Of a stretch of 64,000 nucleotides of DNA, positions 13,771 through 61,984 are shown piece after piece (position 1 is the stretch's first letter; each line of letters begins with the position of its first letter). The translations under genes were made by a program, and so were the position numbers. The DNA lies in the IMG/VR virus record IMGVR_UViG_3300034072_000926, positions 62,001 through 126,000 of that record. One strand, written 5' to 3'. The notes below the pieces were generated by a model. The model saw only the letters and a list, made by a program, of their open reading frames with translations, ran no database searches and was not told the DNA's origin.

Positions 13771-14112
13771 TTATTTCAGGAGAAGATTTAGGGCTTTTGT
13801 CATATCATCGAAGGAAGCTGGCTTCTCAATGAGATTAAAACCATGATAGCAAGACGAGAGACGATGGAGTTCACCGGTGCAGATCAAACCCGGCGTGAGG
13901 GTCTTCCTCATCATATCAGCAACGGGTTCAGAAGTGCCATCAAGTAATGTCACGTCGAGGATCACTCCGGAGAAGCGATTCACTCTGATCAGTTCCATGG
14001 CCTCTTTAACAGTCCCGACCATGGCCGCGACGTCCACTCCCTCTTCTTTGCAGACTTCTTCCCAATATAATTGCAGGAAGGCCTCGTCTTCGACGATAAG
14101 GACAGTGGACAT
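13771..14112 (-). CDS. single-domain response regulator (receiver), SdrG/MrrA-like
   Basis: VLIVEDE, ILDVTL (phospho-Asp), P..ICTG (FATG-like), EKP motifs; no output domain. Confidence 0.88.
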   Translation of the reverse strand: MSTVLIVEDEAFLQLYWEEVCKEEGVDVAAMVGTVKEAMELIRVNRFSGVILDVTLLDGTSEPVADMMRKTLTPGLICTGELHRLSSCYHGFNLIEKPASFDDMTKALNLLLK

Positions 14113-22693: not shown

Positions 22694-23344
22694 TTAGACT
22701 GCTTGGGTAGGTGGCGAAGGATCTACCTCAGGGGCAGACCATTCTCGTCCACTCAGCGATAGCGTTAGCTCAAGACCAAAATTGTTCCTAAACGCTAGCC
22801 AAGTAATACCTGTGTCAGCACCGGTCAGATCATAACGAGTTAACTGGAAATGACCAGTTGTGCTCGTAGGAAGATTTGCCGATCCGCCTGGCCAGTTCAA
22901 AGAACACATCGAGCCAGAAGTTAAGTTGACAACAGATTGATCTGGATCACTAGGATGAACGCAGACCGTCATAATGCCCATAAGCTTGACCGAACCACCG
23001 TTGCCATAGAGGCTAAAATCGTAAGTAGCAAAGTCACGTTCGTTATGGACGAAAAGTGGGAAGACGCTGGTCATGTTGCTGTTCGAGCCACACACCGCAG
23101 ACACAAGAGGTCCGTGATAGTAGACATCGCCGCCAATGCCACGCTGAATATCAAGTTCAGTTAGAAGCTTGATATTCTGATAGGGATAGGATTTCCTGCC
23201 AGACACGCTGGGATGAGTCTGTGCGCCGATGAAAACTTCACCAGTGTCAGTAGTCATTCCAATCTCGCCATCTTCTAGAGCATTAGGGAGTTCCCCGCTA
23301 GTGCCCCTTCGATGTTGGATCCTGGAGATCTGATAAACAGCCAT
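22694..23344 (-). CDS. putative virion/tail structural protein
   Basis: ISRIQHRRG...L..GEIG...DTGEVFIG N-terminal motif; TAAATA upstream. Confidence 0.65.
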   Translation of the reverse strand: MAVYQISRIQHRRGTSGELPNALEDGEIGMTTDTGEVFIGAQTHPSVSGRKSYPYQNIKLLTELDIQRGIGGDVYYHGPLVSAVCGSNSNMTSVFPLFVHNERDFATYDFSLYGNGGSVKLMGIMTVCVHPSDPDQSVVNLTSGSMCSLNWPGGSANLPTSTTGHFQLTRYDLTGADTGITWLAFRNNFGLELTLSLSGREWSAPEVDPSPPTQAV

Positions 23345-23416
23345 TCTGTCCTCCAATTTACCCTATATTTATTCTCCGCCGCTTGACTTAATCCTATTTC
23401 GTGCTAAAGATATCAT

Positions 23417-24583: not shown

Positions 24584-26215
24584 TCAACGATAAGAAGTGC
24601 GAGTCGTGACCTTCTTCTTTCCTACAGCCTGACGAGCAGCAATCCTGAACTCATCCAAGCTACCATATTCCATTTCAGCTTGCTGAATGATGGCTTCGTG
24701 AATTGTTTCATTGTCATCGAAATGCTTCTGACAAACTGCACGAATAGCCTGGAAGACCGATGCCTGTGGATTGTTCTTCAGAGTTTCCTTCACAATACGC
24801 AGAGCAGCAGCCAACTGACCATTAGTTAAGCCGTGTTGGCCGGCCGCACTAGCCTCTTCCAGTTCCTCCTGCTCAAGTGCTTCAGCGAGCCCCTTAGATA
24901 GGGCCTCAAGACGTGCGCGGGTTTCATGCACGCTTGGCGTGCCTTGGTTCACATAGGACCCTTGCTGAACGCCTGCGAGCTTCGCAACTTCCTGAACCTG
25001 CTGGGCAAAGAAGACGTCTTCGGTCGTGTCTTCTTCAACGACTTCGTCCTCTTCGACTTCTTCGTGGAACTGACGATATTCACCAGTTGGCATAACGTCA
25101 ATGCCTAGCACATAGGCGCCTTCAGCAATCTCAATAGGATGTTCGCCACTTGCGACCTTAGTTGCAATCACGCGAGCATCGCCGTAAGTCGTGAAGCCTT
25201 CCTGGACTAGTTGAACCCTAGTGCCAGCTGTTGCCCACTTTGGCTGTTCGACTGTGCCGATATTTTCCATGATCTGGGTGTGAACCACCACTGCAAAGTT
25301 GTTAGCCTCCATGATGGCCTCCTCTAGTTCTTCTGTTTCATTAAGTTCTGGATCTCCTGCAAGGCCTTGCAGATCGCAATCACCTGTAGTGAGATCATCA
25401 ATGCTTTCGTCCATTTGTTCATCGAACTGGTCCTCAGTATCGGTCAAAAGCGCATCAGTTTCCATCATGTAATGGAGGGCCTGAGCTTTGAACTCTTCTT
25501 CTGACAAAGTGGAAAATTCCTGCATGTAAGGTGTTGCCTGATAGTGCCCATAGGCTCTTTCAAGAATAGTCTCAACTGGCAAACCTTCATCCATACCACC
25601 CCACTCTAGACATTCTAGAAGGTCACCTTTGTATAGACCATTTCCGATGTCAGCAAGACCTTCGGCGAGACTTTCAGAAATCTTTTTCGCAATCATAAGT
25701 GGACTCTTTACCCCTTGGGTCACATAACCCTTCCTCTTGAATTCAGCGAAGGTCTTTTCATTTGTTAGCATCGCACTGCTATTCGAGGCAGAGAATGCAA
25801 TGACCTGGAAGTGTTCCATATCAAACTCAGTCACGCCGCCATACATCACAGTTGGCTTGAACGTAACTTCTTTGAAAGCCTTGATTGCTTCATCCTTAGT
25901 CGAATAGCCAAGCATGACCTTGTCTTCGTCAAACTTCGAACCATCGACAGTTAGCTGATGAACCACATAGACCTTGGCGCCCTTCTTTGGATTCTTCCTC
26001 AGATAGCAATCAAGGTGTTCGCCGTCAGGACTATGGGTTCCCTTGATATAACCGTAATGTGCTGGGACTTTGATTGCCCATTCATCACCGGTCTTCTTGT
26101 TCTTGCCCCTGCGATAACCACCAGCAGGGACTTCAATGGAAATATCTAGTCCTTCGAAGTGCTGACGGCTATGAAGCTTCGCCTCATTGAGCTGTTTGAA
26201 AAATTCCATACTCAC
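24584..26215 (-). CDS. inorganic-pyrophosphatase-domain protein with acidic C-terminal region (putative internal head protein)
   Basis: ISIE...YRRG...HYGYIKGT...DGEHLDCY...Q...FDEDKVMLGY. Confidence 0.75.
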   Translation of the reverse strand: MSMEFFKQLNEAKLHSRQHFEGLDISIEVPAGGYRRGKNKKTGDEWAIKVPAHYGYIKGTHSPDGEHLDCYLRKNPKKGAKVYVVHQLTVDGSKFDEDKVMLGYSTKDEAIKAFKEVTFKPTVMYGGVTEFDMEHFQVIAFSASNSSAMLTNEKTFAEFKRKGYVTQGVKSPLMIAKKISESLAEGLADIGNGLYKGDLLECLEWGGMDEGLPVETILERAYGHYQATPYMQEFSTLSEEEFKAQALHYMMETDALLTDTEDQFDEQMDESIDDLTTGDCDLQGLAGDPELNETEELEEAIMEANNFAVVVHTQIMENIGTVEQPKWATAGTRVQLVQEGFTTYGDARVIATKVASGEHPIEIAEGAYVLGIDVMPTGEYRQFHEEVEEDEVVEEDTTEDVFFAQQVQEVAKLAGVQQGSYVNQGTPSVHETRARLEALSKGLAEALEQEELEEASAAGQHGLTNGQLAAALRIVKETLKNNPQASVFQAIRAVCQKHFDDNETIHEAIIQQAEMEYGSLDEFRIAARQAVGKKKVTTRTSYR

Positions 26216-30706: not shown

Positions 30707-32032
30707 TTACTTCTTACGGCGTTCGCCGAGGTAATCGCGACCCATCATCTGCACCTGATTAGTCAGGTCTTGCAGCTTCTGGATCAGGCTCTTGTATTCG
30801 GAGAGACGAATGTCTGCCAGCATGGTCTGAATGTTGTTCAGGCCGTCTTCAATCTGGCTCATTGCGTCGCTCTGTGTAGGAGCCATTGGCATTGCACCCG
30901 GCATACCCATTGGCTCAACTGGATCAGTACCAAGGGCACCTGGGATACCGGCGTCTGCAGGAATCTCTGCATCAAGGTCGCTGCCCATATCTACTGGTTC
31001 TGCGCCCGCAGGAGCAATCTCTGGAGCATCTAGGTCTCCAAGCTCTTCGGGTTCCCCACCGACTGGACCCGCAGCCAAAACACCCTCTGGATCAATCTCA
31101 GGGGCATCAGCAACTTCAATACCTGCAATGTCGTCATCCATCAGAGGCAGACCTGCGAGTTCGCGCAGGCGGAAGAGTGGGTTTACTTTGTTCATACCAA
31201 TTACTCCTTCGTCTAGGCGGCTCACTTCAGTCTCAGCTACCATTTCAAGCTGGCCGTTCATAATAACGCCGATTGTTCCGTTTGGTCCATGTGGGATCTT
31301 GACCTGGCCGGTTACACCGCCAACGTTCACATCCTCACCAATTGCGAATTCGATCTCCTCGTCGAAACGAGGCTTGTGCTTGGCACCACGACCGTGCTTG
31401 TCTACCTTACGAGCGTCGACGCCATCTTTGTGGTAGCCGGCCTTACCAGCAACCGGCATAGCAGCAAGTGGATTGCGCTGCTTCATAGTTGCCATCTTTT
31501 CACGAGCTTCACGCTCACGCTTCTTTGAATTCTTGCTCATCTTCTCTTCAATCTCAATGGAATCACGAACTGTTGGCTTGCGGAGGATCTCCGACAGAGC
31601 GCGACCAGTGCGATAAGCACCTTCACGATCATTGCACTCAATGCGGTAGTTTACAGGACTGGTTGCCTGATAAGCAACTTCATTCTCGTCCAACCAATCC
31701 AGAACGCGATCACGGGTTTGTTCAGTAACTTCGACCGCATAGGTGAAGCCTTCATCAACGCGAGTCATAACACCGAAGGTTTCGTCCAGTGCCTTGCCTT
31801 CGCGGATGCTTTCCCATTGTGCGTTCAGGAGATCGTTGCTCATTGCAGCCTCATTCTTTAACTTGATACCATATTTACCTAAAAGAGAATTCACTCGAAC
31901 AGTATTCCTGCTCTTGATCGCATCGACCAATGCCATAAGGATATTGCCTTCGATTTGTGCCTCCAGGTCATTAGCAGTTTTCTCATCCACACCCTTGCTT
32001 ACAAGGTAGTCGGTCAAGTCGAACTTATCCAT
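30707..32032 (-). CDS. acidic putative internal head protein
   Basis: LDE/VDE motifs, RLRELAG motif, SH3-like segment. Confidence 0.65.
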   Translation of the reverse strand: MDKFDLTDYLVSKGVDEKTANDLEAQIEGNILMALVDAIKSRNTVRVNSLLGKYGIKLKNEAAMSNDLLNAQWESIREGKALDETFGVMTRVDEGFTYAVEVTEQTRDRVLDWLDENEVAYQATSPVNYRIECNDREGAYRTGRALSEILRKPTVRDSIEIEEKMSKNSKKREREAREKMATMKQRNPLAAMPVAGKAGYHKDGVDARKVDKHGRGAKHKPRFDEEIEFAIGEDVNVGGVTGQVKIPHGPNGTIGVIMNGQLEMVAETEVSRLDEGVIGMNKVNPLFRLRELAGLPLMDDDIAGIEVADAPEIDPEGVLAAGPVGGEPEELGDLDAPEIAPAGAEPVDMGSDLDAEIPADAGIPGALGTDPVEPMGMPGAMPMAPTQSDAMSQIEDGLNNIQTMLADIRLSEYKSLIQKLQDLTNQVQMMGRDYLGERRKK

Positions 32033-32198
32033 TCTTCTTTCCCTTCTTTACGTGAATACGGGTCTTGATCTTAGGACCACGATTCTCTTGGATGATCTGC
32101 TCAAATTGAAGAGACCATAGGTATGAAGCCTGTTCACGGATATTTCCAGCGACAGGCGTAATAAGAGGCTCATCGCCAAACAGCTCAGAAAGAGTCAT
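32025..32198 (-). CDS. small protein, 57 aa (MTLSELFGDE...KKGKKNG)
   Basis: Below ORF-track cutoff; TAAATA at 32232-32237; overlaps the next start. Confidence 0.55.
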   Translation of the reverse strand: MTLSELFGDEPLITPVAGNIREQASYLWSLQFEQIIQENRGPKIKTRIHVKKGKKNG

Positions 32199-32305
32199 TG
32201 GTTGCTCACAGGTTCAAAGTTGGATCCGTGGTATTTAGCTTATCGTGCAATCTGCGGAGCAATGTAGCTAGTTAAAGCAACATACCCAAAAAACGCACTT
32301 TACGG

Positions 32306-32311
32306 TAAATA
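32306..32311 (+). promoter_or_regulatory. T4-like late promoter core TAAATA for the holin-like/PAS operon
   Basis: TAAATA about 30 nt upstream of ATG 32342, with GGAG RBS; same motif precedes many late genes. Confidence 0.6.
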
Positions 32312-32341
32312 ACGGTAACGGTTCGCGTAGGGAGACTACAT

Positions 32342-32587
32342 ATGGGTGATCTATTCAAAAGTGTAGTCGAAATGATCGCGAAGGGCGAAGCAGGAGCTCT
32401 GACGGCTATTCTCCTAGCTATCATTGGTGTCTTGGGTTGGTATTGTTTTCGCCTGATGAAGCAACTGGAAAAGAAGGACGAGAAGATCTATAAGATCATC
32501 GACGACTATTCCAAGAACAACATCACTATCACTGACGCTCTAAACGGCCTCAAGACGGTGCTTATTGAGATTAAGGCAAAGCTCTAA
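32342..32587 (+). CDS. single-TM small membrane protein, BhlA/UviB holin-like architecture
   Basis: TM segment ALTAILLAIIGVLGWYCF followed by charged coiled coil KKDEKIYKIIDD...IEIKAKL. Confidence 0.6.
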   Translation: MGDLFKSVVEMIAKGEAGALTAILLAIIGVLGWYCFRLMKQLEKKDEKIYKIIDDYSKNNITITDALNGLKTVLIEIKAKL

Positions 32588-34248
32588 TGTGGTTTAAAGA
32601 TCGGAAGGAAAAGAAGAAGCAGCGTGAAGCTGTTTTGAAAGCGGCGCTTGACTCTAGCGAAGCCCTTGAAAAGGCCGCTAAAGGCACGATGAACCTTGCC
32701 GAAGATGTAACCAAAACCCTTCAAAGCAAAATTGACGACTATGCTCGGCAGATTGACCAAACGTCTAGTCTGCTGAGCGACGCTCTCATTCTAGTTGATG
32801 ACCACGGAGTCATCGAAAGTTTCAATCCAGCGGCTGAAAAGATGTTTGGTATTGCTAGGAGACATATCAGGGGGAAGAGCATTTCTAAGCTCTTCGAATT
32901 CCCCAAAGATACTATCATCGACCCAGTGTTCATGGATGAACTAACCGTAAAGGTCAATGAGAATGATCCTGCAGCCACTGTCCATTATGAAGACTTCATG
33001 GGCATCCGTAAAGATGGCATGACTTTCCATGTGGACGTCAGTGCCAGCAAATTCACCAGGAACAACTCGAAAGTCCATTACATCATCCTAGTCCACGATG
33101 TGACCCACAAGGTGGCGAATAGCAAAATGGTCGAAGATCTTGCTCAGAGGAACATGGAACTCCTTGCTACCATTGATGCATCAAATACCGGATTCATTAT
33201 CCTAAGCCCTGATGGTAGCGACTTCAAGATCAACTTCGTCAACATGGGCTTTAGTCGTCTCACTGGGTATTCTAGGACTCAGATCAAGAATATGAGCCTT
33301 ATGGATCTTCTTGGCATCGAGCAAACTTTCTGGTCGGTTCGTCGTAGCCTTCTTGAACAGAAAGAAGCACGTCACGAAGTCCAGCTAGAGATCGGAACAT
33401 GTCAGACTATCTGGTTTGACATTCAGATCACACCAGTGTTCAACGATGGTATCTGTAGTCAGTGGATCTTAGTGTTCTATGACACTACTGCACTAAAGAA
33501 AGCATATCACGATCTCAGGAAGAGCGAATCACATTTCAAGGCGTTTAGTGATGCAAGTTCCGAGTCCATGCTTATCCACAACTTTGGTCAGGTCATTGAT
33601 TGGAACGATCGCCTCAACGCATTGACTGGCTATACAGATGAAGAGATTGAGAAACTCATGCCTCTTGATCTTGTCCATCCTCTCGAACGTGAGAAGATCA
33701 GAGAAGAGGTTCATTTAACTGGTAACAATAGCTATGAAACGCTATTCATGACCAAACAAGGCGATGTTCGTGAGGTTGCAATCAACAGTCGTTCCATTGA
33801 ATGGGATAACACTGATGCAAGGATTTCAATTGTTCGAGATGTAACCGAATACAAGGATATCGAGACTCAGTTGAAGACTGCAAGGGAGCGTTATCGCACG
33901 GTCATCGATAACACGATCGATATGGTCATTTGCTTCAATAGCGATTTCGAGATTACCTTCTCGAATCAGACCTTCCGTGACTACTATGAAGTAGAGCTAG
34001 AAGACATCAATGGGTTCTCACTCTTGGAGATCATCCCTGAGACTGACCATAAGAAGTTCAAGGAATATATGATGGAGATCGCCCCTGGGAATGATGTTCG
34101 TCGAGGTATTCACCGTGTCCAGCGTCATGGAGACATTAGGATGCAGGATTGGATCGACCGTGGCATCTTTGATGAAGATGGAAATCTCATTGAAATTCAG
34201 AGTGTTGCTCGAGACGTAACTAGCCTTTTGCCTCCACCTACTACTTGA
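32587..34248 (+). CDS. multi-PAS sensor protein (4 PAS domains, no output domain)
   Basis: Four PAS S-box units (FNPAAEKMFG, VNMGFSRLTGYS, WNDRLNALTGYT, FSNQTF) ending in HDVT, YDTT, RDVT and RDVT; stop 8 aa after the last. Confidence 0.9.
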   Translation: MWFKDRKEKKKQREAVLKAALDSSEALEKAAKGTMNLAEDVTKTLQSKIDDYARQIDQTSSLLSDALILVDDHGVIESFNPAAEKMFGIARRHIRGKSISKLFEFPKDTIIDPVFMDELTVKVNENDPAATVHYEDFMGIRKDGMTFHVDVSASKFTRNNSKVHYIILVHDVTHKVANSKMVEDLAQRNMELLATIDASNTGFIILSPDGSDFKINFVNMGFSRLTGYSRTQIKNMSLMDLLGIEQTFWSVRRSLLEQKEARHEVQLEIGTCQTIWFDIQITPVFNDGICSQWILVFYDTTALKKAYHDLRKSESHFKAFSDASSESMLIHNFGQVIDWNDRLNALTGYTDEEIEKLMPLDLVHPLEREKIREEVHLTGNNSYETLFMTKQGDVREVAINSRSIEWDNTDARISIVRDVTEYKDIETQLKTARERYRTVIDNTIDMVICFNSDFEITFSNQTFRDYYEVELEDINGFSLLEIIPETDHKKFKEYMMEIAPGNDVRRGIHRVQRHGDIRMQDWIDRGIFDEDGNLIEIQSVARDVTSLLPPPTT

Positions 34249-34291
34249 CAAAAGGTTATAAGACTTTACTCTAAAGCCTAAGGAGTAAGTC

Positions 34292-34408
34292 ATGTCATCA
34301 CAAATCCCAGCCTACCGATTCAAGATCATCCACAAGGATGACAATGTAACCGTGCGATGTAATGACATATTGCTCGCTGCTATCAAAGAAGCGAAGAAAT
34401 CATCCTGA
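34292..34408 (+). CDS. 38-aa peptide MSSQIPAYRFKIIHKDD...
   Basis: TTGACA promoter-like element near 34245, AAGGAG RBS and downstream terminator. Confidence 0.5.
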   Translation: MSSQIPAYRFKIIHKDDNVTVRCNDILLAAIKEAKKSS

Positions 34409-34415
34409 TACAAGA

Positions 34416-34441
34416 AAACGCCAGTGTTTCCACTGGCGTTC
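34416..34441. terminator. hairpin terminator between convergent genes
   Basis: AACGCCAGTG-TTTC-CACTGGCGTT. Confidence 0.65.
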
Positions 34442-34465
34442 CTCGTTTTCGGACTTTCTAAAAAC

Positions 34466-34839: not shown

Positions 34840-35043
34840 CTAACGACGGATAATAGCAGGGGCTACTTCAGAGGTCTTCTTGCGCTTCTTCTTACGTTCA
34901 GCAGCATCGTAGATACCCTTGTGGCCATTCGGATCAAAGCCAGCACCAATCCCACCAACACTGGTCGCTACATTGCCTGATGCCGATGCGCCGGCGGTTG
35001 CCGTTTCGAGAATAGGGGTCGCTACGATTTCTGTCCAACGCAT
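34840..35043 (-). CDS. small putative internal head protein (MRWTEI...ILE/TATAGASASG)
   Basis: Capsid-targeting-like N-terminus; TAATG coupling. Confidence 0.6.
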   Translation of the reverse strand: MRWTEIVATPILETATAGASASGNVATSVGGIGAGFDPNGHKGIYDAAERKKKRKKTSEVAPAIIRR

Positions 35044-35948
35044 TATTTCACCTGTAATCCGAGATCCTTGAATGAGTCAGGTATTTCAACCTTCAAGCTA
35101 TTTAAGCGCTCATGATAGATATTACGGATTGTGTTGCAGTCCTCCCAGGTGTAAATGCGACGACAGGTCATCCAGAGACCTTCAATGGTTTTCATTTCAG
35201 AACCATTAAGATAAGGACGTTCACCGAACAACAGTTCTGGCATTAACGCAGGATCATTTATAACTTCTCGGGTGGCAGGAAGAGCTGACGGGAAGATTTG
35301 AAGAAACTCATCCTTCGAGACTTCCTTGAAGTCCTGAACTCGACCCTTGCCGTCCTTACGCATAGGACGATAGCGATAGCGCCATACACAACCACGATCA
35401 TGAAAGAACGTTGGACCCACTCGAGCAATGACTTTACCATCGTCTTCTAACACCCAATCACTGTTGAAGGCCACAATAGCCTTGATCATTTCTGTTCGGT
35501 ACAACCCCTTATAGTTTGAAGTATCTTGCGGCTGTCGATACCAGGGTATACTGGCCAAAGTCAGGGCCGGAGAGAAGTAGGAGAACTCCTGCCACTCGAA
35601 GTTGCCGAACATGAAGTCAATCTGCACATATCCGTTGTCAGGATTGCCGTCAATAGGGACCGCCGTGAAGATCTGATTATTACCAGGACGAGGCTTAACG
35701 TGGTCCTCTCCCAAGAAGGCGATCAGCTGACTAGCGACCTTTGCCTGGTCATAACGAGTAATCTCGAGGTTGAGATCAATGTCGCCGGAGTCAGGATTCT
35801 TTCCTGCACTACCCAGCATAGCTTCGCGTAACTCAGAGGTTTTGTTGAGGGTGTAGTCGGGCCACTTCTTTTCTAGCCAGAACAACGTGTGTTCTATCTC
35901 TTGTCGAAGGATCCGTCGGGTAACTCCCTCGAATGCTTTACCGCCCAT
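35043..35948 (-). CDS. DNA polymerase beta-superfamily nucleotidyltransferase
   Basis: LGSAGK...SGDIDL and VQIDFMF catalytic motifs. Confidence 0.75.
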   Translation of the reverse strand: MGGKAFEGVTRRILRQEIEHTLFWLEKKWPDYTLNKTSELREAMLGSAGKNPDSGDIDLNLEITRYDQAKVASQLIAFLGEDHVKPRPGNNQIFTAVPIDGNPDNGYVQIDFMFGNFEWQEFSYFSPALTLASIPWYRQPQDTSNYKGLYRTEMIKAIVAFNSDWVLEDDGKVIARVGPTFFHDRGCVWRYRYRPMRKDGKGRVQDFKEVSKDEFLQIFPSALPATREVINDPALMPELLFGERPYLNGSEMKTIEGLWMTCRRIYTWEDCNTIRNIYHERLNSLKVEIPDSFKDLGLQVK

Positions 35949-37137
35949 CTTCGATTCTCTTTCTCGTATCGTAGAACATGTTCAGAGTTCGTTGGTGCAA
36001 ATCCTCATGCAGATAACTGATCCTGTTGGCTTCGGATAAGTCAAACATATTCGGGTTAAGGACCAACTTATGTCTCGATGCTTTGTATCTCTCTAATAGC
36101 ACATCCAGGCGCTCAAGTCGCTTTGCTTTTGGCCAATCCTTTGTCCGGCTCAAGAAACTCGGTCGATTAGGACGCCGACCACCTACAATCCAGTATTTCA
36201 CAAGATGTGTAAACTTGTTTAGTTCGGCGAAGCGTGGATTGTTCATCTTGAACTTCAATCCAGAAGATTCAACAACCATTCCTTCGTGTAGGGAATACCA
36301 ACTACTATGTCCGAGATTTATATATCGGAGATGATGGTTAGTGATGACCTGGTGTGCTATCCGTTCTTTAATGGATTTAATGACATTATGATAATGGGTT
36401 TTGATTACGATGCGTTCTGTCTTGATCTGTTCTTTTAGTTCAGACCATTTACGACCATTAGTCTTAGGATGAGTCCTAGCGAGACTGGCTTCCAATATGT
36501 CTTGATAAGTGAACTCATCAACATTGCTCATTCGCTGAGAGAACGAAATAAGCAACTGATATGCAGCGGTTATAGTGTCATTGAGCTCGCTAGTTCTGTT
36601 CTCGTTAACCTTTTGATTCACCGCGAAGCCACAAATAGTCGGATTATTAATCTCGCTGAGTGTCCTACCATCTAGAGAGACTTGGGTTTTCGGTAGAAGA
36701 TTCGTTCGGAACGTCTTGATCAATTTCTCAGTTTCGCGGGAGACCATGAAGTTCGAATATGTAATAACGATCTTGAATCTAGAATGCTCCCAAGTATGAT
36801 AAGGAACACTATTAGGGAGTTCGCCCTGGATGATCTCTGCCCCGAAGGTGTTTCCCTTTTCGATGAGACCGAGACTTATGAGTTCGCTGACAAGCATCAT
36901 CGAGCAATGATGAGCGTGATGATATGTCTGAGCCCAACACTCGTCCGGCCATTCTGCTAGACTATAACAGGGAGGCGCACCCTTGCGCTTGGAAAAGAAT
37001 CGACCCTCCTCATCAAGACCAAACTCAAGCGAGGAGCCATCTAGCTTCTCACTGATTGTCCAGCCGCGATTGAACGAATCCAGTAGTGTCTGGATCGGGA
37101 GATCTTCTATGTGAGGTAGACTGGTCATGCCCTGCAT
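35938..37137 (-). CDS. RNA/DNA ligase-like nucleotidyltransferase
   Basis: PHIEDL, SEKLDGS (KxDG), AEII, EGMVV, FK motifs. Confidence 0.7.
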   Translation of the reverse strand: MQGMTSLPHIEDLPIQTLLDSFNRGWTISEKLDGSSLEFGLDEEGRFFSKRKGAPPCYSLAEWPDECWAQTYHHAHHCSMMLVSELISLGLIEKGNTFGAEIIQGELPNSVPYHTWEHSRFKIVITYSNFMVSRETEKLIKTFRTNLLPKTQVSLDGRTLSEINNPTICGFAVNQKVNENRTSELNDTITAAYQLLISFSQRMSNVDEFTYQDILEASLARTHPKTNGRKWSELKEQIKTERIVIKTHYHNVIKSIKERIAHQVITNHHLRYINLGHSSWYSLHEGMVVESSGLKFKMNNPRFAELNKFTHLVKYWIVGGRRPNRPSFLSRTKDWPKAKRLERLDVLLERYKASRHKLVLNPNMFDLSEANRISYLHEDLHQRTLNMFYDTRKRIEDGR

Positions 37138-57096: not shown

Positions 57097-60000
57097 TTAC
57101 TTACGGAAGTTTGCGTTCTTGAGAACCCTTTCAAGCTCTTCACGGAACATTGCGTCGCCTTCGTCAACCTTCACATCGTCAACGAAATCTTCGCTCTTGT
57201 CGCCGCCGAGAACTTCTTCAGTTTCGTGGAACCTATCGCGATAACGCTCATATTCATAATCACCACGATCAGCATCACGGGCTGCTAATTCTTGGTAGAT
57301 TTCGTCAACTAGGTTTGCCTGAGTCGATGCACTCACCTGGTCAATGATGTCTTCACCGTTGTCTTTACGAACAATACTGTAGATCGAAATACCTCCGCCG
57401 TAGTTCACATCAGGTTCGGCTGGCTCATTTTCGAACTCAACAGTGACCTCAATGTCATCTTCTAGATCAGTGCTGATGAAAGTGTCAATGCTGTTATTCG
57501 ACACCGCTTCATTGATTCCTTCGGCCATTTCAAGTGGATCTTCGCCACCGATGCAACGTCCGTTCTCATAGGAAACAATCGTCTTGTCATCCATCCAGTC
57601 AGAGATACGATAGTTACCATTGCCAAGATCATCAACGTGCTGAACAAAGCCACCCTTACTCTCTTCACGTGCCTGACGAGCAAGCCTCATCAGCGCCATA
57701 CGTGGTGGAGGAGAAACTTCGTCAATTTCTTCACCGTGGATCTGAACAACAGGTAGTTCCAAGATAGCATCCTTGAGGAATACGCTCAGAACAGCAGCCA
57801 GCTGATTCTTGAAGTTGTATTCTTCCTCATCAACATCGTCCTGACCGACTCCTGGATCAACACCGAAGGATTCGGGGTCAGCTAGAACCTTAGACGCAAA
57901 TTCACGAAGCTGAGCAAGGACTTCATCAATCTTGTTGTCTTCGACGTGGGCAACTTCTAGAACGCTCTGAAGAGTCTCATCCATATCAAATGGCCTGCGG
58001 TATGCACCGGCCTTCGTTAGAACACCCTTGTTCATCGTTACAGTCTTGTTCTCTGGAAGACGTGCATGGGCATTATCAAATGCCACCTTTGCGTTCTTGT
58101 CATCAAGAGCAACAACCTTACCCGAACCGTAAGCCTTGTGAGTGACACGATCACCGACAGAGAGCTCCGAGTTAAAATCTGGATTGGTTGGCGCTGCCTT
58201 GTCCATAACTGGCATTCCGTTCGAGAAGTTAGGTGCTTCTAGGACGGATTCTGGATCAAAGCCTTCGAACCATGCCGATAGCTCTTCCTCTTCCTTAACG
58301 CCACCTAGTGCGCCAATCTTGTCCATGTCGTCAACGTGCATTTCCTTGACTCCGCCGTTCATGAATTCGATGGTTGCGATGTCGCCGTCCATGCCAACAA
58401 CCTTGCCCGAGCCTAGATCGGTCGAAACGTGGTTGCCAATCTCAATACCATGACCCATCGGCATCTGATCCTCGGATGCAAACTCATACATGGATTCAGA
58501 AATGTTCCAGCCGTGCTGTTCTAGCAATGGCTTAACGTGCTTCTCGAAGAGATCCTTTGCCTCAGTGACAATGAAGCCTTCAGTGCCCTGATATCCCACA
58601 ATATCATCGTCTTCGAAAGCCTTCACAATCTGATGGATGATACCCTTGATGAAGTAGCTTGCTGGCATTGGCTCAACCTTGTCCTCAGGACCAATCGAAC
58701 CATCAACAAACTCGCTCATACCAGCTTCGTCTAGGAAGGTTTCGCCATCAAAGTTGTCGATGAAGTATTCCAACGAATGCTCAACCTTCGAGTAATTGTC
58801 ATTGATCGGATCGTTGCTCTCGTAGAAGGTTTCATCCACATCATCACCGTCATCCATGAACTTGGTCAGAGTCGAAACCAGCTTGGTCTTAACAGTCTGC
58901 TCAGCACCATCTAGCTTCTTACCTTCTGCCAGCTTATCAATGATATTGCTGACATAATTTAGAGTAGCAATGTTCGAGAGCTTGTTCTGGCTTACAAAGA
59001 GATCGAGGTAGAAGCGATCCTGAACCGTCGAATCATTTGGGCTGAAAGTCGGGAAGTGATCAGGGAGATCTGGGATCTGAACCTGGCCGTTTAGGATTGC
59101 ACGAAGACCGTCAGCTAGTTCGCCGATGCTCTTCTTCTGATCGCCATCCATATCACCAGTTTCGCCAGATGCTGCATAACGTGCATTGGTCCACTGAGTT
59201 GCATAGTCCAAGAATACGTCATTTTCGTTGATCTGATATGCAGATTCAACTAGGTCTAGATAACCCATCGCATCCTCAAAGACAGTGCCTTCCATAAAGG
59301 CAATGTTGGAACCAAGCTGGATCCAATTAGCAGCATCATAGCCATACTCAGAGGCAAGAGCTTCGACTAGAGCGTCAGCAGCGGCTTCCTCGAGAGTGAT
59401 AACACCATGAAACATTTCATTAATGTTGGTCATCTTTTCACCCATTGTTAGCAGAGCGACTGGCATCAAAGACTCTGCCAGAGCGTGGTTAGAATCAATC
59501 ATTAGAAGTCCTTGGAGACGGGAAATTTCCTGACCCAGCGAATCATCCTCAGATAGCGTAACGGTAGTCACCGGAAGACCTGCTTCCACGACCTTTGGAT
59601 ATCCTTTAGGACGAGACATGGTCACGAATGCCTTACGGATCTCCATAATCCTTCCCTTGATGCTAGGACGTAGTGCTAGGGCACTTTCATCAAGAGCATT
59701 CCTCGAATGAAGGATGTAACGATTTAGCTTAGATAGCTGTAGGGATTCACATGCGAGCTGAACCATCGAAATACTGGTTTCATCATGTGGCTTACCACCT
59801 TGTGCAATATGTTGTGCGAATGCACGACCTGCAGAGAGGTGATTTTCAGGAAACTTGAAACGCTCGCCATGTGCCGTCTCAACGAACAAGCTGAGAATGT
59901 TACGACCACGGCTTCCAATTACACCCTCACGGACAGGAACTGTGTGACGGATGATAAGCTTCGTTGGACCAATCTTCTGGTAGGATGTCTTTGTTGAACC

Positions 60001-60357
60001 CCACATTGCAGCTTCGGTCATAGAAGCCTGATACGCAAAATCCTTTGGACGCAATTCACGGCCAAACTTACGGACATTGAGCAATACATTGAAACGCGAC
60101 GTGATCTTGCGGAGGGTGCTAATGAGCTTGCTGGCCTTCTTAACGTCAGTTGATTGGCTCAAATAGATCTTAACTTCTGAATCTGAACCAGCTTCGATGA
60201 CGCTGATCATGATATTGCCAGGAACTGCGAAGACACGACGAGCCTGTGAAGGCTCGAAGGTCTGATTGCCTGTCTCGTCATATAGAGTCAAGGTCATTCC
60301 AAGACCCTTGAGGACCTGGAAGAGTTCTTCACTCAGACTGTCAAACAATGCGCTCAT
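57097..60357 (-). CDS. 1086-aa acidic late protein (putative head/internal protein) with two SH3/Tudor-like modules
   Basis: GSTKTSYQ, R.I..LFVE...GERFKFP..HL..GRA.A.H...GG.P.D N-terminal block; TAAATA at 60380. Confidence 0.7.
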   Translation of the reverse strand: MSALFDSLSEELFQVLKGLGMTLTLYDETGNQTFEPSQARRVFAVPGNIMISVIEAGSDSEVKIYLSQSTDVKKASKLISTLRKITSRFNVLLNVRKFGRELRPKDFAYQASMTEAAMWGSTKTSYQKIGPTKLIIRHTVPVREGVIGSRGRNILSLFVETAHGERFKFPENHLSAGRAFAQHIAQGGKPHDETSISMVQLACESLQLSKLNRYILHSRNALDESALALRPSIKGRIMEIRKAFVTMSRPKGYPKVVEAGLPVTTVTLSEDDSLGQEISRLQGLLMIDSNHALAESLMPVALLTMGEKMTNINEMFHGVITLEEAAADALVEALASEYGYDAANWIQLGSNIAFMEGTVFEDAMGYLDLVESAYQINENDVFLDYATQWTNARYAASGETGDMDGDQKKSIGELADGLRAILNGQVQIPDLPDHFPTFSPNDSTVQDRFYLDLFVSQNKLSNIATLNYVSNIIDKLAEGKKLDGAEQTVKTKLVSTLTKFMDDGDDVDETFYESNDPINDNYSKVEHSLEYFIDNFDGETFLDEAGMSEFVDGSIGPEDKVEPMPASYFIKGIIHQIVKAFEDDDIVGYQGTEGFIVTEAKDLFEKHVKPLLEQHGWNISESMYEFASEDQMPMGHGIEIGNHVSTDLGSGKVVGMDGDIATIEFMNGGVKEMHVDDMDKIGALGGVKEEEELSAWFEGFDPESVLEAPNFSNGMPVMDKAAPTNPDFNSELSVGDRVTHKAYGSGKVVALDDKNAKVAFDNAHARLPENKTVTMNKGVLTKAGAYRRPFDMDETLQSVLEVAHVEDNKIDEVLAQLREFASKVLADPESFGVDPGVGQDDVDEEEYNFKNQLAAVLSVFLKDAILELPVVQIHGEEIDEVSPPPRMALMRLARQAREESKGGFVQHVDDLGNGNYRISDWMDDKTIVSYENGRCIGGEDPLEMAEGINEAVSNNSIDTFISTDLEDDIEVTVEFENEPAEPDVNYGGGISIYSIVRKDNGEDIIDQVSASTQANLVDEIYQELAARDADRGDYEYERYRDRFHETEEVLGGDKSEDFVDDVKVDEGDAMFREELERVLKNANFRK

Positions 60358-60400: not shown

Positions 60401-61984
60401 TTAGAATGCAATCGGCATCGGCGCGTTGCTTGGATCGTTGTCGTCAGAAACAACCTTGAGGTTCGATTCAATGACGTCTTCCCAGTCGGCGCAGATCTGA
60501 AGTAGTCGCACAATCTGAAGGGTGCTCATGACCAAGTCGTCATTTACGCCAATCTTGCCCTTGTAGGAGCCGCCACCACGCACAAAGTTCTTGAGCTCCG
60601 TGAGGAGCGCACGACTCTTGAGCGTCATCCTACGGGTTTCTACAAGCGTCTTGAAGCGAGAACATGCCGTCATCTTCGTGCGGGTATTTGTATTCAGACC
60701 TTTACGACCACGACCGCCGCCGGACTTCCTAGGCTCATGAGTGAAAATACCAGGGAAGTTCTCTTCGCCGATATTGTCAATCTGAACCAGTGCCGCTTCA
60801 CCGAGACTATTGTTCTCAACAGTCCAGTAGATCTCTGGGTCACCATCCTGATCAGGATTGTTTCGTAGAGTGTGATGGATGTAGAGCAAAGCCTTACGTA
60901 GAATCTCGACCTGATCCTGTGTGATTGTCTTATTGTGACGCCACTCAGCAACCTGTGTCATTGTGCTCAAGTTGAACACTTGGATAGCCGCAAAGTCACT
61001 TCCCGTTCCCATCGAAGGGTCGAGAGTTGCGCCATAGATGTGATTAGCCTGTGGCTCTTCGAACCAACGCATCTGTCCAATCTTGAACAGTGGATCTTGC
61101 GGACTCAAGTTAGCGAGGGTAATTGGATTGACAAGGGTTTCGTCTTCCGAAACGAACTTGCATTCATATTCTCGCTGGAACTTTTCCTCGCCTAGCTGCT
61201 GACGCTGTGTCGTTGCCCATGCTTCGTCACGAGTTGGGTTCTTGTCCCAAGTGATTTCCAGAGGCATGTAGCCGTTACGTCCAAGACCGCCAGGGATAAC
61301 ATCACCATTGTCGTCGATGTTGTTCTTTGCGCCGAACCAGATTTCTGCAAACTGATCTTCGTCATTGTTTGGCGTCGAAGTGATGATGCAGCTACCACCC
61401 GTCGACAGGGTTGGCGCAATAGCTGACCAGAACTCAACTGCCTTGTTTGGCTGCACGAACGCAAATTCGTCCAGGTATAGAAGCGAGATCGAGAGACCAC
61501 GACCTGCGTCCTTGGAAGTTGCGCGACTGATGATCCTGGAACCGTTATCAAAAGCGATTGTGCCCTTGTTGTATTCCACAACACCGCTACGCAGCCAGTT
61601 GAATTGTTCGAGGTTTTCGTAAGCAAAACGAATACGATCCATAATTTCAAGAGCAGAAACGAACTTGTTCGCTGCGATCAAAATAGTCGTATCAGGTTCG
61701 AACATTGCCTTCCAGAGCAAGAAGCCTGCTGCACAAGTTGTCTTACCCATCTGACGAGCCGTCAGAGCAATGGTATAACGATTCTTGTGGAAGCTATCGA
61801 TCATCTCTTCCTGGTAGGGCCATAGTTTGAATGGCACACGACCCTGGGTAGGATGCTGGATCTTGACGTAGTTCTTACAAAAATAGATAGGGTCACTCAT
61901 GCACTTGCGGAGTTCTTCAATCTGATTGATATTGAAGCGATCCTTGCTATAACCCTTCTTGATGATTTCGATTTCTTTTGCCAT
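60401..61984 (-). CDS. terL: terminase large subunit (T4 gp17-like)
   Basis: DPIYF..NY, YQEE, ARQMGKT, LYLDEFAF, ITSTPN, F.REYEC.F, DPS.G.G.D, DDLVMS. Confidence 0.96.
   Translation of the reverse strand: MAKEIEIIKKGYSKDRFNINQIEELRKCMSDPIYFCKNYVKIQHPTQGRVPFKLWPYQEEMIDSFHKNRYTIALTARQMGKTTCAAGFLLWKAMFEPDTTILIAANKFVSALEIMDRIRFAYENLEQFNWLRSGVVEYNKGTIAFDNGSRIISRATSKDAGRGLSISLLYLDEFAFVQPNKAVEFWSAIAPTLSTGGSCIITSTPNNDEDQFAEIWFGAKNNIDDNGDVIPGGLGRNGYMPLEITWDKNPTRDEAWATTQRQQLGEEKFQREYECKFVSEDETLVNPITLANLSPQDPLFKIGQMRWFEEPQANHIYGATLDPSMGTGSDFAAIQVFNLSTMTQVAEWRHNKTITQDQVEILRKALLYIHHTLRNNPDQDGDPEIYWTVENNSLGEAALVQIDNIGEENFPGIFTHEPRKSGGGRGRKGLNTNTRTKMTACSRFKTLVETRRMTLKSRALLTELKNFVRGGGSYKGKIGVNDDLVMSTLQIVRLLQICADWEDVIESNLKVVSDDNDPSNAPMPIAF

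What the first reader, a model, noticed from the sequence alone, without database searches (positions are those of the whole stretch)
32300..34248. Late holin-like membrane protein translationally coupled to an output-less four-PAS sensor
Seen: a two-gene plus-strand operon inside a minus-strand late block. It has its own TAAATA late-promoter core (32306) and a TAATG stop/start overlap. Gene 1 (81 aa) has one TM helix and a charged coiled coil. Gene 2 (553 aa) has an N-terminal coiled coil and four PAS domains, and ends 8 aa after the last DVT motif, where a histidine kinase or GGDEF domain would normally begin. PAS1 resembles FixL-type PAS but lacks an obvious heme-ligating His; PAS2 is LOV-like but lacks GxNCRFLQ. 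Known: BhlA/UviB holins have this TM plus coiled-coil layout, and PAS domains bind small ligands and dimerise. Inference: this may be a phage sensing module in which the PAS array binds the membrane protein via the coiled coils and links host metabolic or redox state to lysis timing. Alternatively it could be a dominant-negative decoy of host PAS kinases. I know of no described phage system like this.
Basis: partly seen in the sequence, partly recalled or inferred. Interest (0 to 1): 0.82.

Follow-up and report, generated by a model that had tools for sequence, protein, structure and literature searches.

The report
Jumbo-phage membrane-anchored PAS sensor pair
A group of giant bacteriophages carries a conserved, late-expressed gene pair: a tiny membrane protein followed by a four-PAS-domain sensor with no enzymatic output. 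Its function is untested, but it probably lets the phage read the state of the infected cell at the membrane, possibly to time lysis.

Summary
Gene 1 (32342..32587, 81 aa, one TM helix) overlaps gene 2 (32587..34248, 553 aa) in TAATG. Gene 2 is a long N-terminal helix plus four PAS domains and nothing else. The window lies in a 465-kb Atu_ph07-like jumbo phage.

The pair is not a truncated kinase. The small gene is followed by a PAS-only gene in all 22 related viral loci that hold downstream DNA. It is also followed by one in Agrobacterium phage Atu_ph07, Sinorhizobium phage Phosso and several distant metagenomic relatives. The PAS count varies (1 to 4), but the N-terminal helix plus PAS1 is constant.

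TAAATA lies 14-54 nt upstream of gene 1 in every jumbo-phage locus. It is a genome-wide, intergenic, gene-oriented motif, and the genome encodes a T4 gp55-like late sigma factor.

The holin idea is unproven. Gene 1 matches no holin family, including BhlA, and is not next to the lysozyme. Its Atu_ph07 orthologue (gp48) was detected by mass spectrometry in virion preparations.

Best reading: a membrane anchor docking a cytoplasmic PAS sensor, with an output at the membrane. Lysis timing is the leading but untested output. No published description was found.

The parts
32232..32237 (-). TAAATA late-promoter core (read on the minus strand) for the divergent gene 32025..32198
   Evidence: sequence. 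One search places the motif 39 nt upstream of that gene.
32306..32311 (+). TAAATA late-promoter core of the operon
   Evidence: present 14-54 nt upstream of gene 1 in the window and in all 25 loci L002-L027; 126 sites in the genome, 68% of them in the 12% that is intergenic. 59 genes carry it 10-60 nt upstream in sense, against 6-23 for control hexamers.
32330..32334 (+). GGGAG ribosome-binding site of gene 1
   Evidence: GGAGAC is conserved in close relatives.
32342..32587 (+). Gene 1: 81-aa bitopic membrane protein, predicted N-out/C-in
   Evidence: The family has 186 clusters, nearly all 78-105 aa.
32390..32449 (+). Gene 1 transmembrane helix (residues 17-36)
   Evidence: 19-residue Kyte-Doolittle score 2.08. 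K+R average 0.66 before the helix and 4.38 in the 15 residues after it; helix 17-57.
32486..32584 (+). Gene 1 conserved cytoplasmic helix-turn-helix motif (residues 49-81, consensus I-I-D-D-Y-x-K-G-N ... E-I-K-x-K-L)
   Evidence: Its 3' end also holds the AAGG ribosome site of gene 2.
32587..34248 (+). Gene 2: 553-aa cytoplasmic protein with an N-terminal helix and four PAS domains, no output domain
32599..32772 (+). Gene 2 N-terminal helix (residues 5-62); proposed docking or output element
   Evidence: invariant or near-invariant S23, L27, A30, A31, T34, A38, V41, L45 fall on one helical face; pLDDT about 50; its length covaries with the gene 1 linker.
32782..33099 (+). PAS1 (residues 66-171), present in every family member
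33187..33483 (+). PAS2 (residues 201-299), LOV-like without the Cys or flavin motif; found only in the four-PAS subclade
   Evidence: sequence.
33565..33840 (+). PAS3 (residues 327-418)
   Evidence: 22 positions at least 98% conserved among 56 orthologues.
33922..34215 (+). PAS4 (residues 446-543), the best conserved PAS domain
   Evidence: 27 positions at least 98% conserved.
34292..34408 (+). Third small ORF (38 aa, AAGGAG ribosome site); variable and probably dispensable
   Evidence: contigs from related strains replace 34236-34404.
34417..34450 (+). Intrinsic terminator ending the plus-strand operon
   Evidence: 10-pair stem with 6 G-C pairs, followed by a T run.

Best explanation
The locus is a late operon: TAAATA promoter, gene 1, gene 2, a variable small ORF, then a terminator. 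I read it as encoding a membrane-tethered intracellular sensor.

Gene 1 is a bitopic inner-membrane protein. It has a short acidic N-terminus outside, one TM helix, and a variable-length helical spacer. A strongly conserved helix-turn-helix motif sits in the cytoplasm.

Gene 2 is made in step with gene 1 through the TAATG overlap. It is a soluble protein whose conserved N-terminal helix docks on the cytoplasmic hairpin of gene 1. A conserved Trp and a basic cluster at its tip would lie at the membrane. Its PAS array (1 to 4 domains depending on lineage) binds a cytoplasmic ligand or partner.

The N-terminal helix, not a catalytic domain, is the output. Changes in the PAS array would alter how gene 1 behaves in the membrane. 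The most likely target is the timing of membrane permeabilisation at the end of infection. Gene 1 would then act as holin or holin regulator and gene 2 as a cytoplasmic antiholin-like modulator.

Shown here:
- the gene structure and the four PAS folds;
- conservation of the pair and its tight coupling;
- the promoter motif;
- absence of any kinase or cyclase domain;
- expression of the Atu_ph07 orthologue of gene 1 as a protein.

Inferred: topology, the gene 1-gene 2 complex (my estimate about 0.6), and lysis timing as the output (about 0.25).
For: Structure and PAS content.

The pair is conserved:
- A gene 2 homologue follows the small gene in 22 of 22 IMG/VR loci that hold downstream DNA, with a 1- or 4-base overlap or a gap of at most 29 nt.
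- The same holds in Atu_ph07 and Phosso.
- It also holds in distant relatives found by profile search.

Distribution: gene 1 and the PAS domains are single-copy in the genome. A pattern-limited scan of genomes from 185,579 prokaryote species found no gene 1 relative.

No output partner: the phage genome has no HisKA and no GGDEF.

Orthologue gap: about 60 PAS-only orthologue clusters of 550-567 aa are followed by a gap down to cellular kinases at 26% identity or less.

Docking:
- Conservation concentrates in the gene 1 C-terminal motif and the gene 2 N-terminal helix.
- That helix is predicted with low confidence when modelled alone.
- Gene 1 linker length and gene 2 N-terminal length covary: Spearman 0.70, n=23, and all five long-linker cases pair with longer helices.

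Topology.

Late timing. A gp55-like gene is present. Atu_ph07 gp694 resembles T4 gp55.

Protein made: gp48 of Atu_ph07 gave 3 peptides and 37% coverage.

Room for a holin: no holin is known in Atu_ph07 and its lysis mechanism is described as unknown. The lysozyme here is solitary. UniRef's automatic name for gp48 is 'Holin'. Language-model features resemble BhlA clusters at score 0.89, which is a lead only.
Against: - No interaction was tested. The multimer prediction could not be run here.
- The length covariation is not corrected for phylogeny, and some anchor positions were set by hand.
- Gene 1 matches no holin family, and its fold search was empty.
- Gene 1 diverges only somewhat faster than the large terminase (95/88/43/36% identity against 94/91/54/57%). 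I consider that slow for a holin (own knowledge).
- The gene 1 C-terminal motif is slightly better conserved than its TM helix, the reverse of the BhlA family.
- Gene 1 is about 48 kb from the lysozyme.
- gp48 was reported as virion-associated, and the pair sits inside a virion-protein module.
- No cofactor or ligand motif was recognised in any PAS domain.
- Metatranscriptome contigs are shallow and also cover the intergenic DNA, so they do not prove transcription.
Confidence: 0.4

Rival explanations
1. Gene 1 is a small virion-associated protein of these hairy jumbo phages, for example a membrane-active ejection or assembly component. Gene 2 is a non-packaged partner that holds or regulates it in the producing cell. 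The pair would then have nothing to do with lysis.
For: - Atu_ph07 gp48 was found by ESI-MS/MS of a virion preparation, and the PAS protein gp49 was not.
- gp48 lies in the CDS 31-76 cluster, where 29 proteins were detected.
- The window's neighbours are homologues of gp44, gp46 and gp50, all detected.
- In distant relatives the pair follows genes of PHROG 'virion structural protein' families on the same strand.
- Gene 1 is conserved about as well as a core structural gene.
Against: - The mass-spectrometry sample was only PEG-purified. It also held a RecA-like protein, SSB, terminase and ribonucleotide reductase, so membrane debris could carry a late membrane protein.
- Three peptides is no more than SSB gave.
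- I know of no precedent for a PAS array acting as a chaperone of a virion protein.
- The gene 1 topology and positive-inside pattern fit a resident inner-membrane protein.
Confidence: 0.2
2. The pair interferes with host signalling. The membrane anchor places a PAS-only protein next to host membrane sensor kinases, where it heterodimerises with their PAS domains. It acts as a dominant-negative decoy or activator and rewires a host two-component pathway late in infection.
For: - PAS domains dimerise and heterodimerise. The closest solved folds include PpsR, HIF/ARNT and NifL, which signal through protein partners.
- The PAS number and sequence change quickly between lineages, as expected for host-specific targets.
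- The window also encodes a stand-alone CheY-like receiver at 13771..14112.
- A true gene 1 relative lies next to PAS, HisKA, HATPase and receiver genes on another contig.
Against: - The nearest cellular kinases share only 26% identity or less. This is poor mimicry for a decoy.
- Expression from a late promoter leaves little time to profit from rewired transcription.
- The most conserved parts are the phage-specific N-terminal helix and gene 1, not the PAS surfaces.
- The receiver-like gene is missing from Atu_ph07 and one other relative that keep the pair.
Confidence: 0.15
3. The pair is a late-made membrane device against other phages or against host defence. It would act in superinfection exclusion or abortive-infection control, with the PAS array sensing a second infection or a defence signal.
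For: - Small late membrane proteins with cytoplasmic partners do such jobs in T4 (Imm, Sp, rII; own knowledge).
- In locus L022, rIIA and rIIB homologues lie directly beside the pair.
Against: - The rII neighbourhood occurs in one lineage only.
- The PADLOC defence-system library was not searched here, so a match to known defence systems is untested.
- Strict conservation across a deep phage clade fits a core life-cycle function better than an arms-race gene.
Confidence: 0.08
4. Gene 2 is a decaying remnant of a captured sensor histidine kinase, and gene 1 is an unrelated small ORF.
For: [quoted passage not shown]
- The best non-phage matches are PAS kinases.
Against: - All relatives, down to 23% identity, end a few residues after the last PAS domain with intact frames.
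- The pair is conserved and overlapping.
- Gene 1 is under strong constraint, and its orthologue is made as a protein.
Confidence: 0.02

Closest known systems
T4 holin T with its antiholins RI (periplasmic) and RIII (cytoplasmic): lysis inhibition (own knowledge of the T4 literature)
   Same: A T4-like phage with gp55-type late transcription. A late single-TM membrane protein whose soluble domain could be bound by a small-signal-responsive partner. The holin gene lies apart from the lysozyme gene. This is the logic proposed here.
   Different: No sequence relation was found: Pfam Phage_holin_T was not detected, although that search also rang in no control genome. T is N-in with a large periplasmic domain, whereas gene 1 is predicted N-out with a cytoplasmic domain. 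RI and RIII are not PAS proteins. No function has been tested here.
BhlA/UviB holin-like peptides (Pfam PF10960; SPbeta yomB)
   Same: Size of 70-80 aa, a short N-tail ending in G-(G)-P, one TM helix, then a basic stretch and a charged helical C-terminus. Language-model features are similar, score 0.89.
   Different: No significant sequence match: 1 of 21 members at E=0.09, 0.6% probability against SPbeta BhlA, and 67% over 15 columns with the TM unaligned at family-versus-family level. BhlA sits beside an endolysin and a second holin; gene 1 sits beside a PAS gene. BhlA occurs in Bacillota prophages, whereas no gene 1 relative was found in prokaryote genomes.
VqmA-Phage of vibriophage VP882 (PMC8284805)
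   Same: A phage-encoded PAS-domain receptor that reads a small molecule to decide when to kill the host.
   Different: VqmA-Phage has one PAS domain fused to a DNA-binding domain. It acts as a transcription factor in a temperate plasmid-like phage. Here there are up to four PAS domains, no DNA-binding domain, a membrane partner, late expression, and a lytic jumbo phage.
PAS-array regulators that signal through protein partners: PpsR (4hh2) and NifL-NifA (9qq6)
   Same: Tandem PAS domains joined by helices whose output is binding to another protein. They are among the best structural matches.
   Different: These are cellular proteins with extra HTH or GHKL-type domains. They have no membrane anchor partner and share only 9-15% identity in the structural alignments.
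Multi-PAS sensor histidine kinases (the GenBank label of Atu_ph07 gp49)
   Same: PAS S-box domains. The best cellular sequence matches are such kinases.
   Different: HisKA and HATPase_c are absent from the protein in every relative. HisKA is absent from the whole phage genome. The label is wrong.

Membership tests
PAS domain superfamily (Pfam PAS_9, PAS, PAS_4, PAS_3, PAS_8) | Significant profile match above the curated cut-off | tested here: met
   PAS_9 130 bits (cut-off 27) with four stretches; four separate matches in the genome, all inside gene 2, three of them over the cut-off.
PAS domain superfamily | Five-stranded antiparallel sheet with flanking helices; structural match to solved PAS domains | tested here: met
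   four alpha/beta modules with pLDDT 80-93. DosP, Brucella LOV-HK, FixL and PpsR at E of 1e-16 to 1e-12.
Sensor histidine kinase | HisKA dimerisation/phosphoacceptor domain and HATPase_c catalytic domain | tested here: not met
   no such domain, and the protein ends 8 aa after PAS4; the same in all phage relatives; no HisKA anywhere in the 465-kb genome.
LOV (flavin-binding PAS) | GxNCRFLQ motif with the adduct-forming Cys | tested here: not met
   The sequence of PAS2 has NMSLMDLLG at that place.
FixL-type haem PAS | Proximal His on the F-alpha helix | tested here: not met
   PAS1 has no His in the corresponding segment, and that segment is the most variable part of PAS1 across the family. 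Haem binding by another residue cannot be excluded.
BhlA/UviB holin-like family (PF10960) | Profile match to PF10960 | tested here: not met
   1 of 21 members at E=0.089; 0.6% probability; 67% probability over 15 columns outside the TM helix.
BhlA/UviB holin-like family (PF10960) | N-terminal TM helix followed by a charged helical C-terminus, 60-90 aa | tested here: met
   This is a resemblance of layout only.
Holins (functional class) | Small membrane protein made late | tested here: met
Holins (functional class) | Gene placed in a lysis cassette with the endolysin or spanin | tested here: not met
   the only PF00959 lysozyme is about 48 kb away between structural-type genes. This is not decisive, because T4 also separates its holin and lysozyme genes (own knowledge).
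Holins (functional class) | Timed, lethal permeabilisation of the inner membrane that releases the endolysin | not testable with these tools
   Needs expression and complementation assays.
T4-type late transcription unit | Late-promoter core TATAAATA at -10 and a gp55-type sigma factor in the genome | tested here: met
   A six-base core TAAATA, not the full octamer. It is enriched and oriented and conserved upstream of gene 1. A gp55-like gene scores E=6.5e-6. Timing itself was not measured.
Virion structural proteins | Detected in purified particles | tested here: inconclusive
   the Atu_ph07 orthologue gp48 was detected, but in a PEG-purified sample that also held replication enzymes.

The most novel reading that the evidence does not exclude
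These jumbo phages carry a dedicated lysis clock input. A cytoplasmic multi-PAS sensor reads the energetic, redox or metabolic state of the infected cell. Through its N-terminal helix it holds or releases a new type of single-TM holin. Lysis is then timed by host physiology rather than by holin accumulation alone.
Probability: 0.22. Interest if true: 0.85.

Novelty: new variant of a known kind. Interest (0 to 1): 0.6.

Why it matters
Few phage-encoded sensors of host state are known; VP882 VqmA is the PAS-domain example I found in the literature, and I know of arbitrium receptors from my own reading. Those I know of act on lysogeny decisions through DNA-binding outputs.

This unit is different. 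It is deeply conserved and late-expressed, and sits at the membrane of strictly lytic giant phages. It has up to four PAS domains and no recognisable output.

The lysis machinery of Atu_ph07-like phages is unknown (PMC6102473). If the pair controls lysis timing, it would fill that gap and add a new mode of holin regulation.

If it acts instead on host kinases or on virion assembly, it would still be the first defined role for a PAS array in a virulent phage. Two cultured phages, Atu_ph07 and Phosso, make the question directly testable.

Tried and rejected
- Paralogy of gene 1 and gene 2. I suspected it from a shared I-D-D-Y stretch. hhalign gave 0.2% probability, so I rejected it.
- Homology of gene 1 to BhlA. 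Tested with SPbeta BhlA alone and with a 23-sequence BhlA alignment against a 45-sequence gene 1 alignment. It is not established.
- Foldseek of the gene 1 model against viral structures: no hit at E of 0.001 or better.
- Megablast of the region against cultured phages: no match. tblastn of gene 1 alone found only a fragment in Phosso.
- Pfam holin T and SLT in the genome: none. The holin T search rang in no control genome, so it is a weak negative.
- Scan of 185,579 species genomes for gene 1: no relative. The wider alignment A8 was too diverse to seed that scan.
- Metatranscriptomes: four wastewater RNA runs hold near-identical fragments at depth 2-10. They also cover the intergenic promoter region, so they may be DNA carry-over and give no transcript ends.
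I repeated it without that row.
- The HP motif in PAS3. I considered it as a haem ligand, but dismissed it because I recall HP-x-D as the generic PAS_3 motif at that position (own knowledge).
Full report
WHAT IS THERE

The window is bases 62001-126000 of a 465,259-bp viral record that CheckV rates as complete. On the plus strand, gene 1 runs 32342..32587 (81 aa) and gene 2 runs 32587..34248 (553 aa). Stop and start overlap in TAATG. TAAATA lies at 32306-32311 and a GGGAG ribosome site at 32330-32334.

After gene 2 comes a 38-aa ORF (34292..34408) with an AAGGAG ribosome site. It is followed by a 10-pair hairpin with a T run at 34417-34450. Both flanks are minus-strand genes, and three of them have their own TAAATA. 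The intergenic region 32199-32341 therefore holds two divergent promoter cores.

THE TWO PROTEINS

Gene 2:
- It matches five PAS models in Pfam, up to four stretches each, and nothing else.
- AlphaFold2 with a 21-sequence alignment (mean pLDDT 77) gives a helix at residues 5-62. Four PAS folds follow at 66-171, 201-299, 327-418 and 446-543, joined by helices.
- Foldseek finds multi-PAS proteins: DosP, Brucella LOV-HK, PpsR, FixL, MmoS, HIF/ARNT and NifL.
- It ends 8 residues after PAS4.

Gene 1:
- It has one hydrophobic segment (residues 18-36).
- Across 65 family members the N-tail is acidic: K+R average 0.66 and D+E 1.77. The 15 residues after the helix are basic, with K+R 4.38. This predicts N-out/C-in.
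- The model (pLDDT 76) is helix 17-57, a turn at 58-62, then helix 63-80.

RELATIVES

Among cultured phages only Agrobacterium phage Atu_ph07 (490 kb) and Sinorhizobium phage Phosso (469 kb) have a gene 2 homologue (27-32% identity). In both it is preceded by an overlapping 81-aa gene on a plus-strand island between minus-strand genes. All three small proteins align without gaps.

A scan of IMG/VR with the small protein found 24 loci, most of them on contigs of 100-608 kb. In every one of the 22 loci that hold downstream DNA, a gene 2 homologue follows. In 20 of them it is the next plus-strand ORF, with a 1- or 4-base overlap or a gap of at most 29 nt.

A profile search of 1.84 billion representatives found 186 clusters, almost all 78-105 aa. 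Four distant members that I looked up have a gene 2-like neighbour:
- P0140 and P0113 are followed by PAS proteins of 359 and 373 aa.
- P0100 is followed by a 181-aa protein that matches the N-terminal helix and the start of PAS1 (84% probability).
- P0147 is followed by a protein, cut at 395 aa by the contig end, that carries the PAS1 S-box.
- A fifth member, P0086, is followed after about 200 nt by a 153-aa protein with no Pfam hit.

A scan of genomes from 185,579 prokaryote species, seeded with a single conserved-peptide pattern, found no relative.

Gene 2 relatives have 283-567 aa, which is two, three or four PAS domains (one in the 181-aa case), and never an output domain. About 60 clusters of full-length four-PAS orthologues (44-100% identity) are followed by a sharp drop. 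Cellular PAS kinases appear only at 26% identity or less and E of 1e-29 or worse. The 'recently truncated kinase' refutation is therefore not met, and the GenBank label of Atu_ph07 gp49 as a histidine kinase is wrong. The phage genome has no HisKA and no GGDEF domain.

WHERE CONSERVATION LIES

In gene 1 the best-conserved part is the C-terminal motif (consensus I-I-D-D-Y-x-K-G-N-x-T-L-T-E-A-L ... E-I-K-x-K-L). The spacer between the TM helix and this motif varies from 19 to 42 residues.

In gene 2 the residues invariant across the whole family lie mostly in the N-terminal helix: S23, L27, A30, A31, T34, A38, V41 and L45. Their 3-4 residue spacing puts them on one helical face. Further invariant residues lie in the first half of PAS1. 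A Trp at position 2-3 followed by basic residues is nearly invariant.

AlphaFold2 models this conserved helix with pLDDT of only about 50, as expected for an element that needs a partner. Gene 1 spacer length and gene 2 N-terminal length covary: Spearman 0.70, p=2e-4, n=23. All five long-spacer proteins pair with longer helices, 89-118 against 80-90. This test is not corrected for phylogeny, and I set some anchor positions by hand, so I treat it as suggestive.

Among 56 four-PAS orthologues, PAS4 and PAS3 are the best-conserved domains. They have many conserved His, Arg, Trp and Cys residues, so they are the likeliest ligand or partner sites.

LATE EXPRESSION

TAAATA occurs 14-54 nt upstream of gene 1 in the window and in all 25 loci L002-L027, although these intergenic regions are otherwise unalignable. 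In the 465-kb genome it occurs 126 times, and 68% of the sites fall in the 12% that is intergenic. It lies 10-60 nt upstream in sense of 59 genes, against 6-23 genes for seven control hexamers. One of those genes is the 1086-aa virion structural protein at 57097..60357.

The genome encodes a T4 gp55-like protein (E=6.5e-6). Atu_ph07 gp694 was likewise matched to gp55. Late timing is thus well supported by inference, but it has not been measured. The metatranscriptome data are too shallow and probably contaminated with DNA.

IS GENE 1 A HOLIN?

For:
- It is small, bitopic, charged at the C-terminus and late.
- Atu_ph07 has no identified holin, and its lysis mechanism is called unknown.
- The lysozyme here is solitary, as in T4.
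- UniRef's automatic name for gp48 is 'Holin'.
- A language-model search places BhlA clusters among its neighbours.

Against:
- It matches no holin family in Pfam, NCBIfam or PHROGs.
- Comparison with BhlA is negative or inconclusive.
- Gene 1 diverges only somewhat faster than the large terminase: 95/88/43/36% identity against 94/91/54/57% in the same genomes. Gene 2 diverges much faster, at 84/62/25/28%.
- Its cytoplasmic motif is slightly better conserved than its TM helix, unlike BhlA.

The only experimental datum concerns Atu_ph07 gp48. Its computed mass of 9,108 Da matches the 9.11 kDa in the published table. It was detected by ESI-MS/MS with 3 peptides and 37% coverage, and the PAS protein gp49 was not listed. 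That sample was PEG-purified and also contained RecA-like, SSB, terminase and ribonucleotide reductase proteins. It proves the protein is made but does not settle where it resides.

The pair sits in a module of proteins detected in that sample. The window's neighbours are homologues of gp44, gp46 and gp50. Distant relatives have 'virion structural protein' PHROG families upstream.

CONCLUSION

I favour a membrane anchor (gene 1) docking a cytoplasmic PAS sensor (gene 2) through the two conserved helical elements. My confidence in that complex is about 0.6. The output would be exerted at the inner membrane late in infection.

Control of lysis timing is the leading specific output, at about 0.25. 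A virion-associated role for gene 1 (0.2) and interference with host PAS kinases (0.15) are live rivals.

The closest known logic is T4 holin T with its antiholins. The closest known phage PAS sensor is VqmA-Phage of VP882 (PMC8284805). The pair is a member of neither family.

Noticed in passing
window 13771..14112 (-): A 113-aa stand-alone CheY-like receiver. It has an acidic N-terminal pocket, an I-L-D phosphoacceptor-like site, and T and K-P motifs. Pfam Response_reg scores 28 bits, just under the 30.2 cut-off. Homologues exist in 3 of 5 related jumbo phages but not in Atu_ph07. The phage has no HisKA domain of its own.
   Followed up: partly
window 34292..34408 (+): A third small ORF (38 aa, strong AAGGAG site) lies between the PAS gene and the terminator. 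Relatives have different small ORFs at this place. Contigs from two wastewater runs replace 34236-34404 with about 26 other bases, so the ORF looks dispensable.
   Followed up: partly
L040 10001-15086 (ENA contig of 74 kb, GC 54-68%): A true gene 1 family member (119 aa, hhalign 96.7% over TM helix and C-motif) is followed by several genes. They are an 85-aa coiled-coil ORF, a 208-aa PAS protein, a PAS_3-HisKA ORF, a HATPase_c ORF and a receiver. This may be a lineage in which the small membrane protein accompanies a complete, perhaps frameshifted, PAS kinase pathway. Whether the contig is cellular or viral is unclear.
   Followed up: partly
window 60401..61984 (-), with G002 and G005 (Atu_ph07): The large terminase is one intact 526-aa gene here. 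In a 436-kb relative its two matching pieces lie about 970 nt apart inside one 874-aa open frame, which looks like an intein. In Atu_ph07 they lie in two separate ORFs (gp109 and gp110).
   Followed up: no
window 24584..26215 (-): The N-terminus of this 542-aa protein matches Pfam InPase (PF18823, 2e-33). PHROGs assigns the same stretch to 'minor head protein', 'DarB-like antirestriction' and 'endolysin' families. The annotations conflict.
   Followed up: no
window 22694..23356 (-): This 220-aa protein has an Mtd_N domain, the N-terminus of the major tropism determinant (PF18454, 4e-10). It may be a receptor-binding or diversity-generating target protein.
   Followed up: no
L022 5212-8220 (-): In one distant relative (a 425-kb contig), rIIB and rIIA homologues lie convergent and directly downstream of the PAS gene (PHROG E of 2e-79 and 1e-25). 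This was not seen in the other lineages examined.
   Followed up: no
window 35043..37137 (-): Two overlapping minus-strand genes lie downstream of the operon. One has a weak RNA-ligase match (PF09414, E=0.0014, below the cut-off). Both are conserved in Phosso (47% and 28% identity). So not every gene in this 'late block' is a plausible structural gene.
   Followed up: no
G000:C1:141940-142311 (+), outside the window: The only PF00959 lysozyme of the genome (142 aa, 175 bits) sits in a TAAATA-driven operon between two large structural-type genes. No small membrane gene lies beside it. It corresponds in position to Atu_ph07 gp141.
   Followed up: partly
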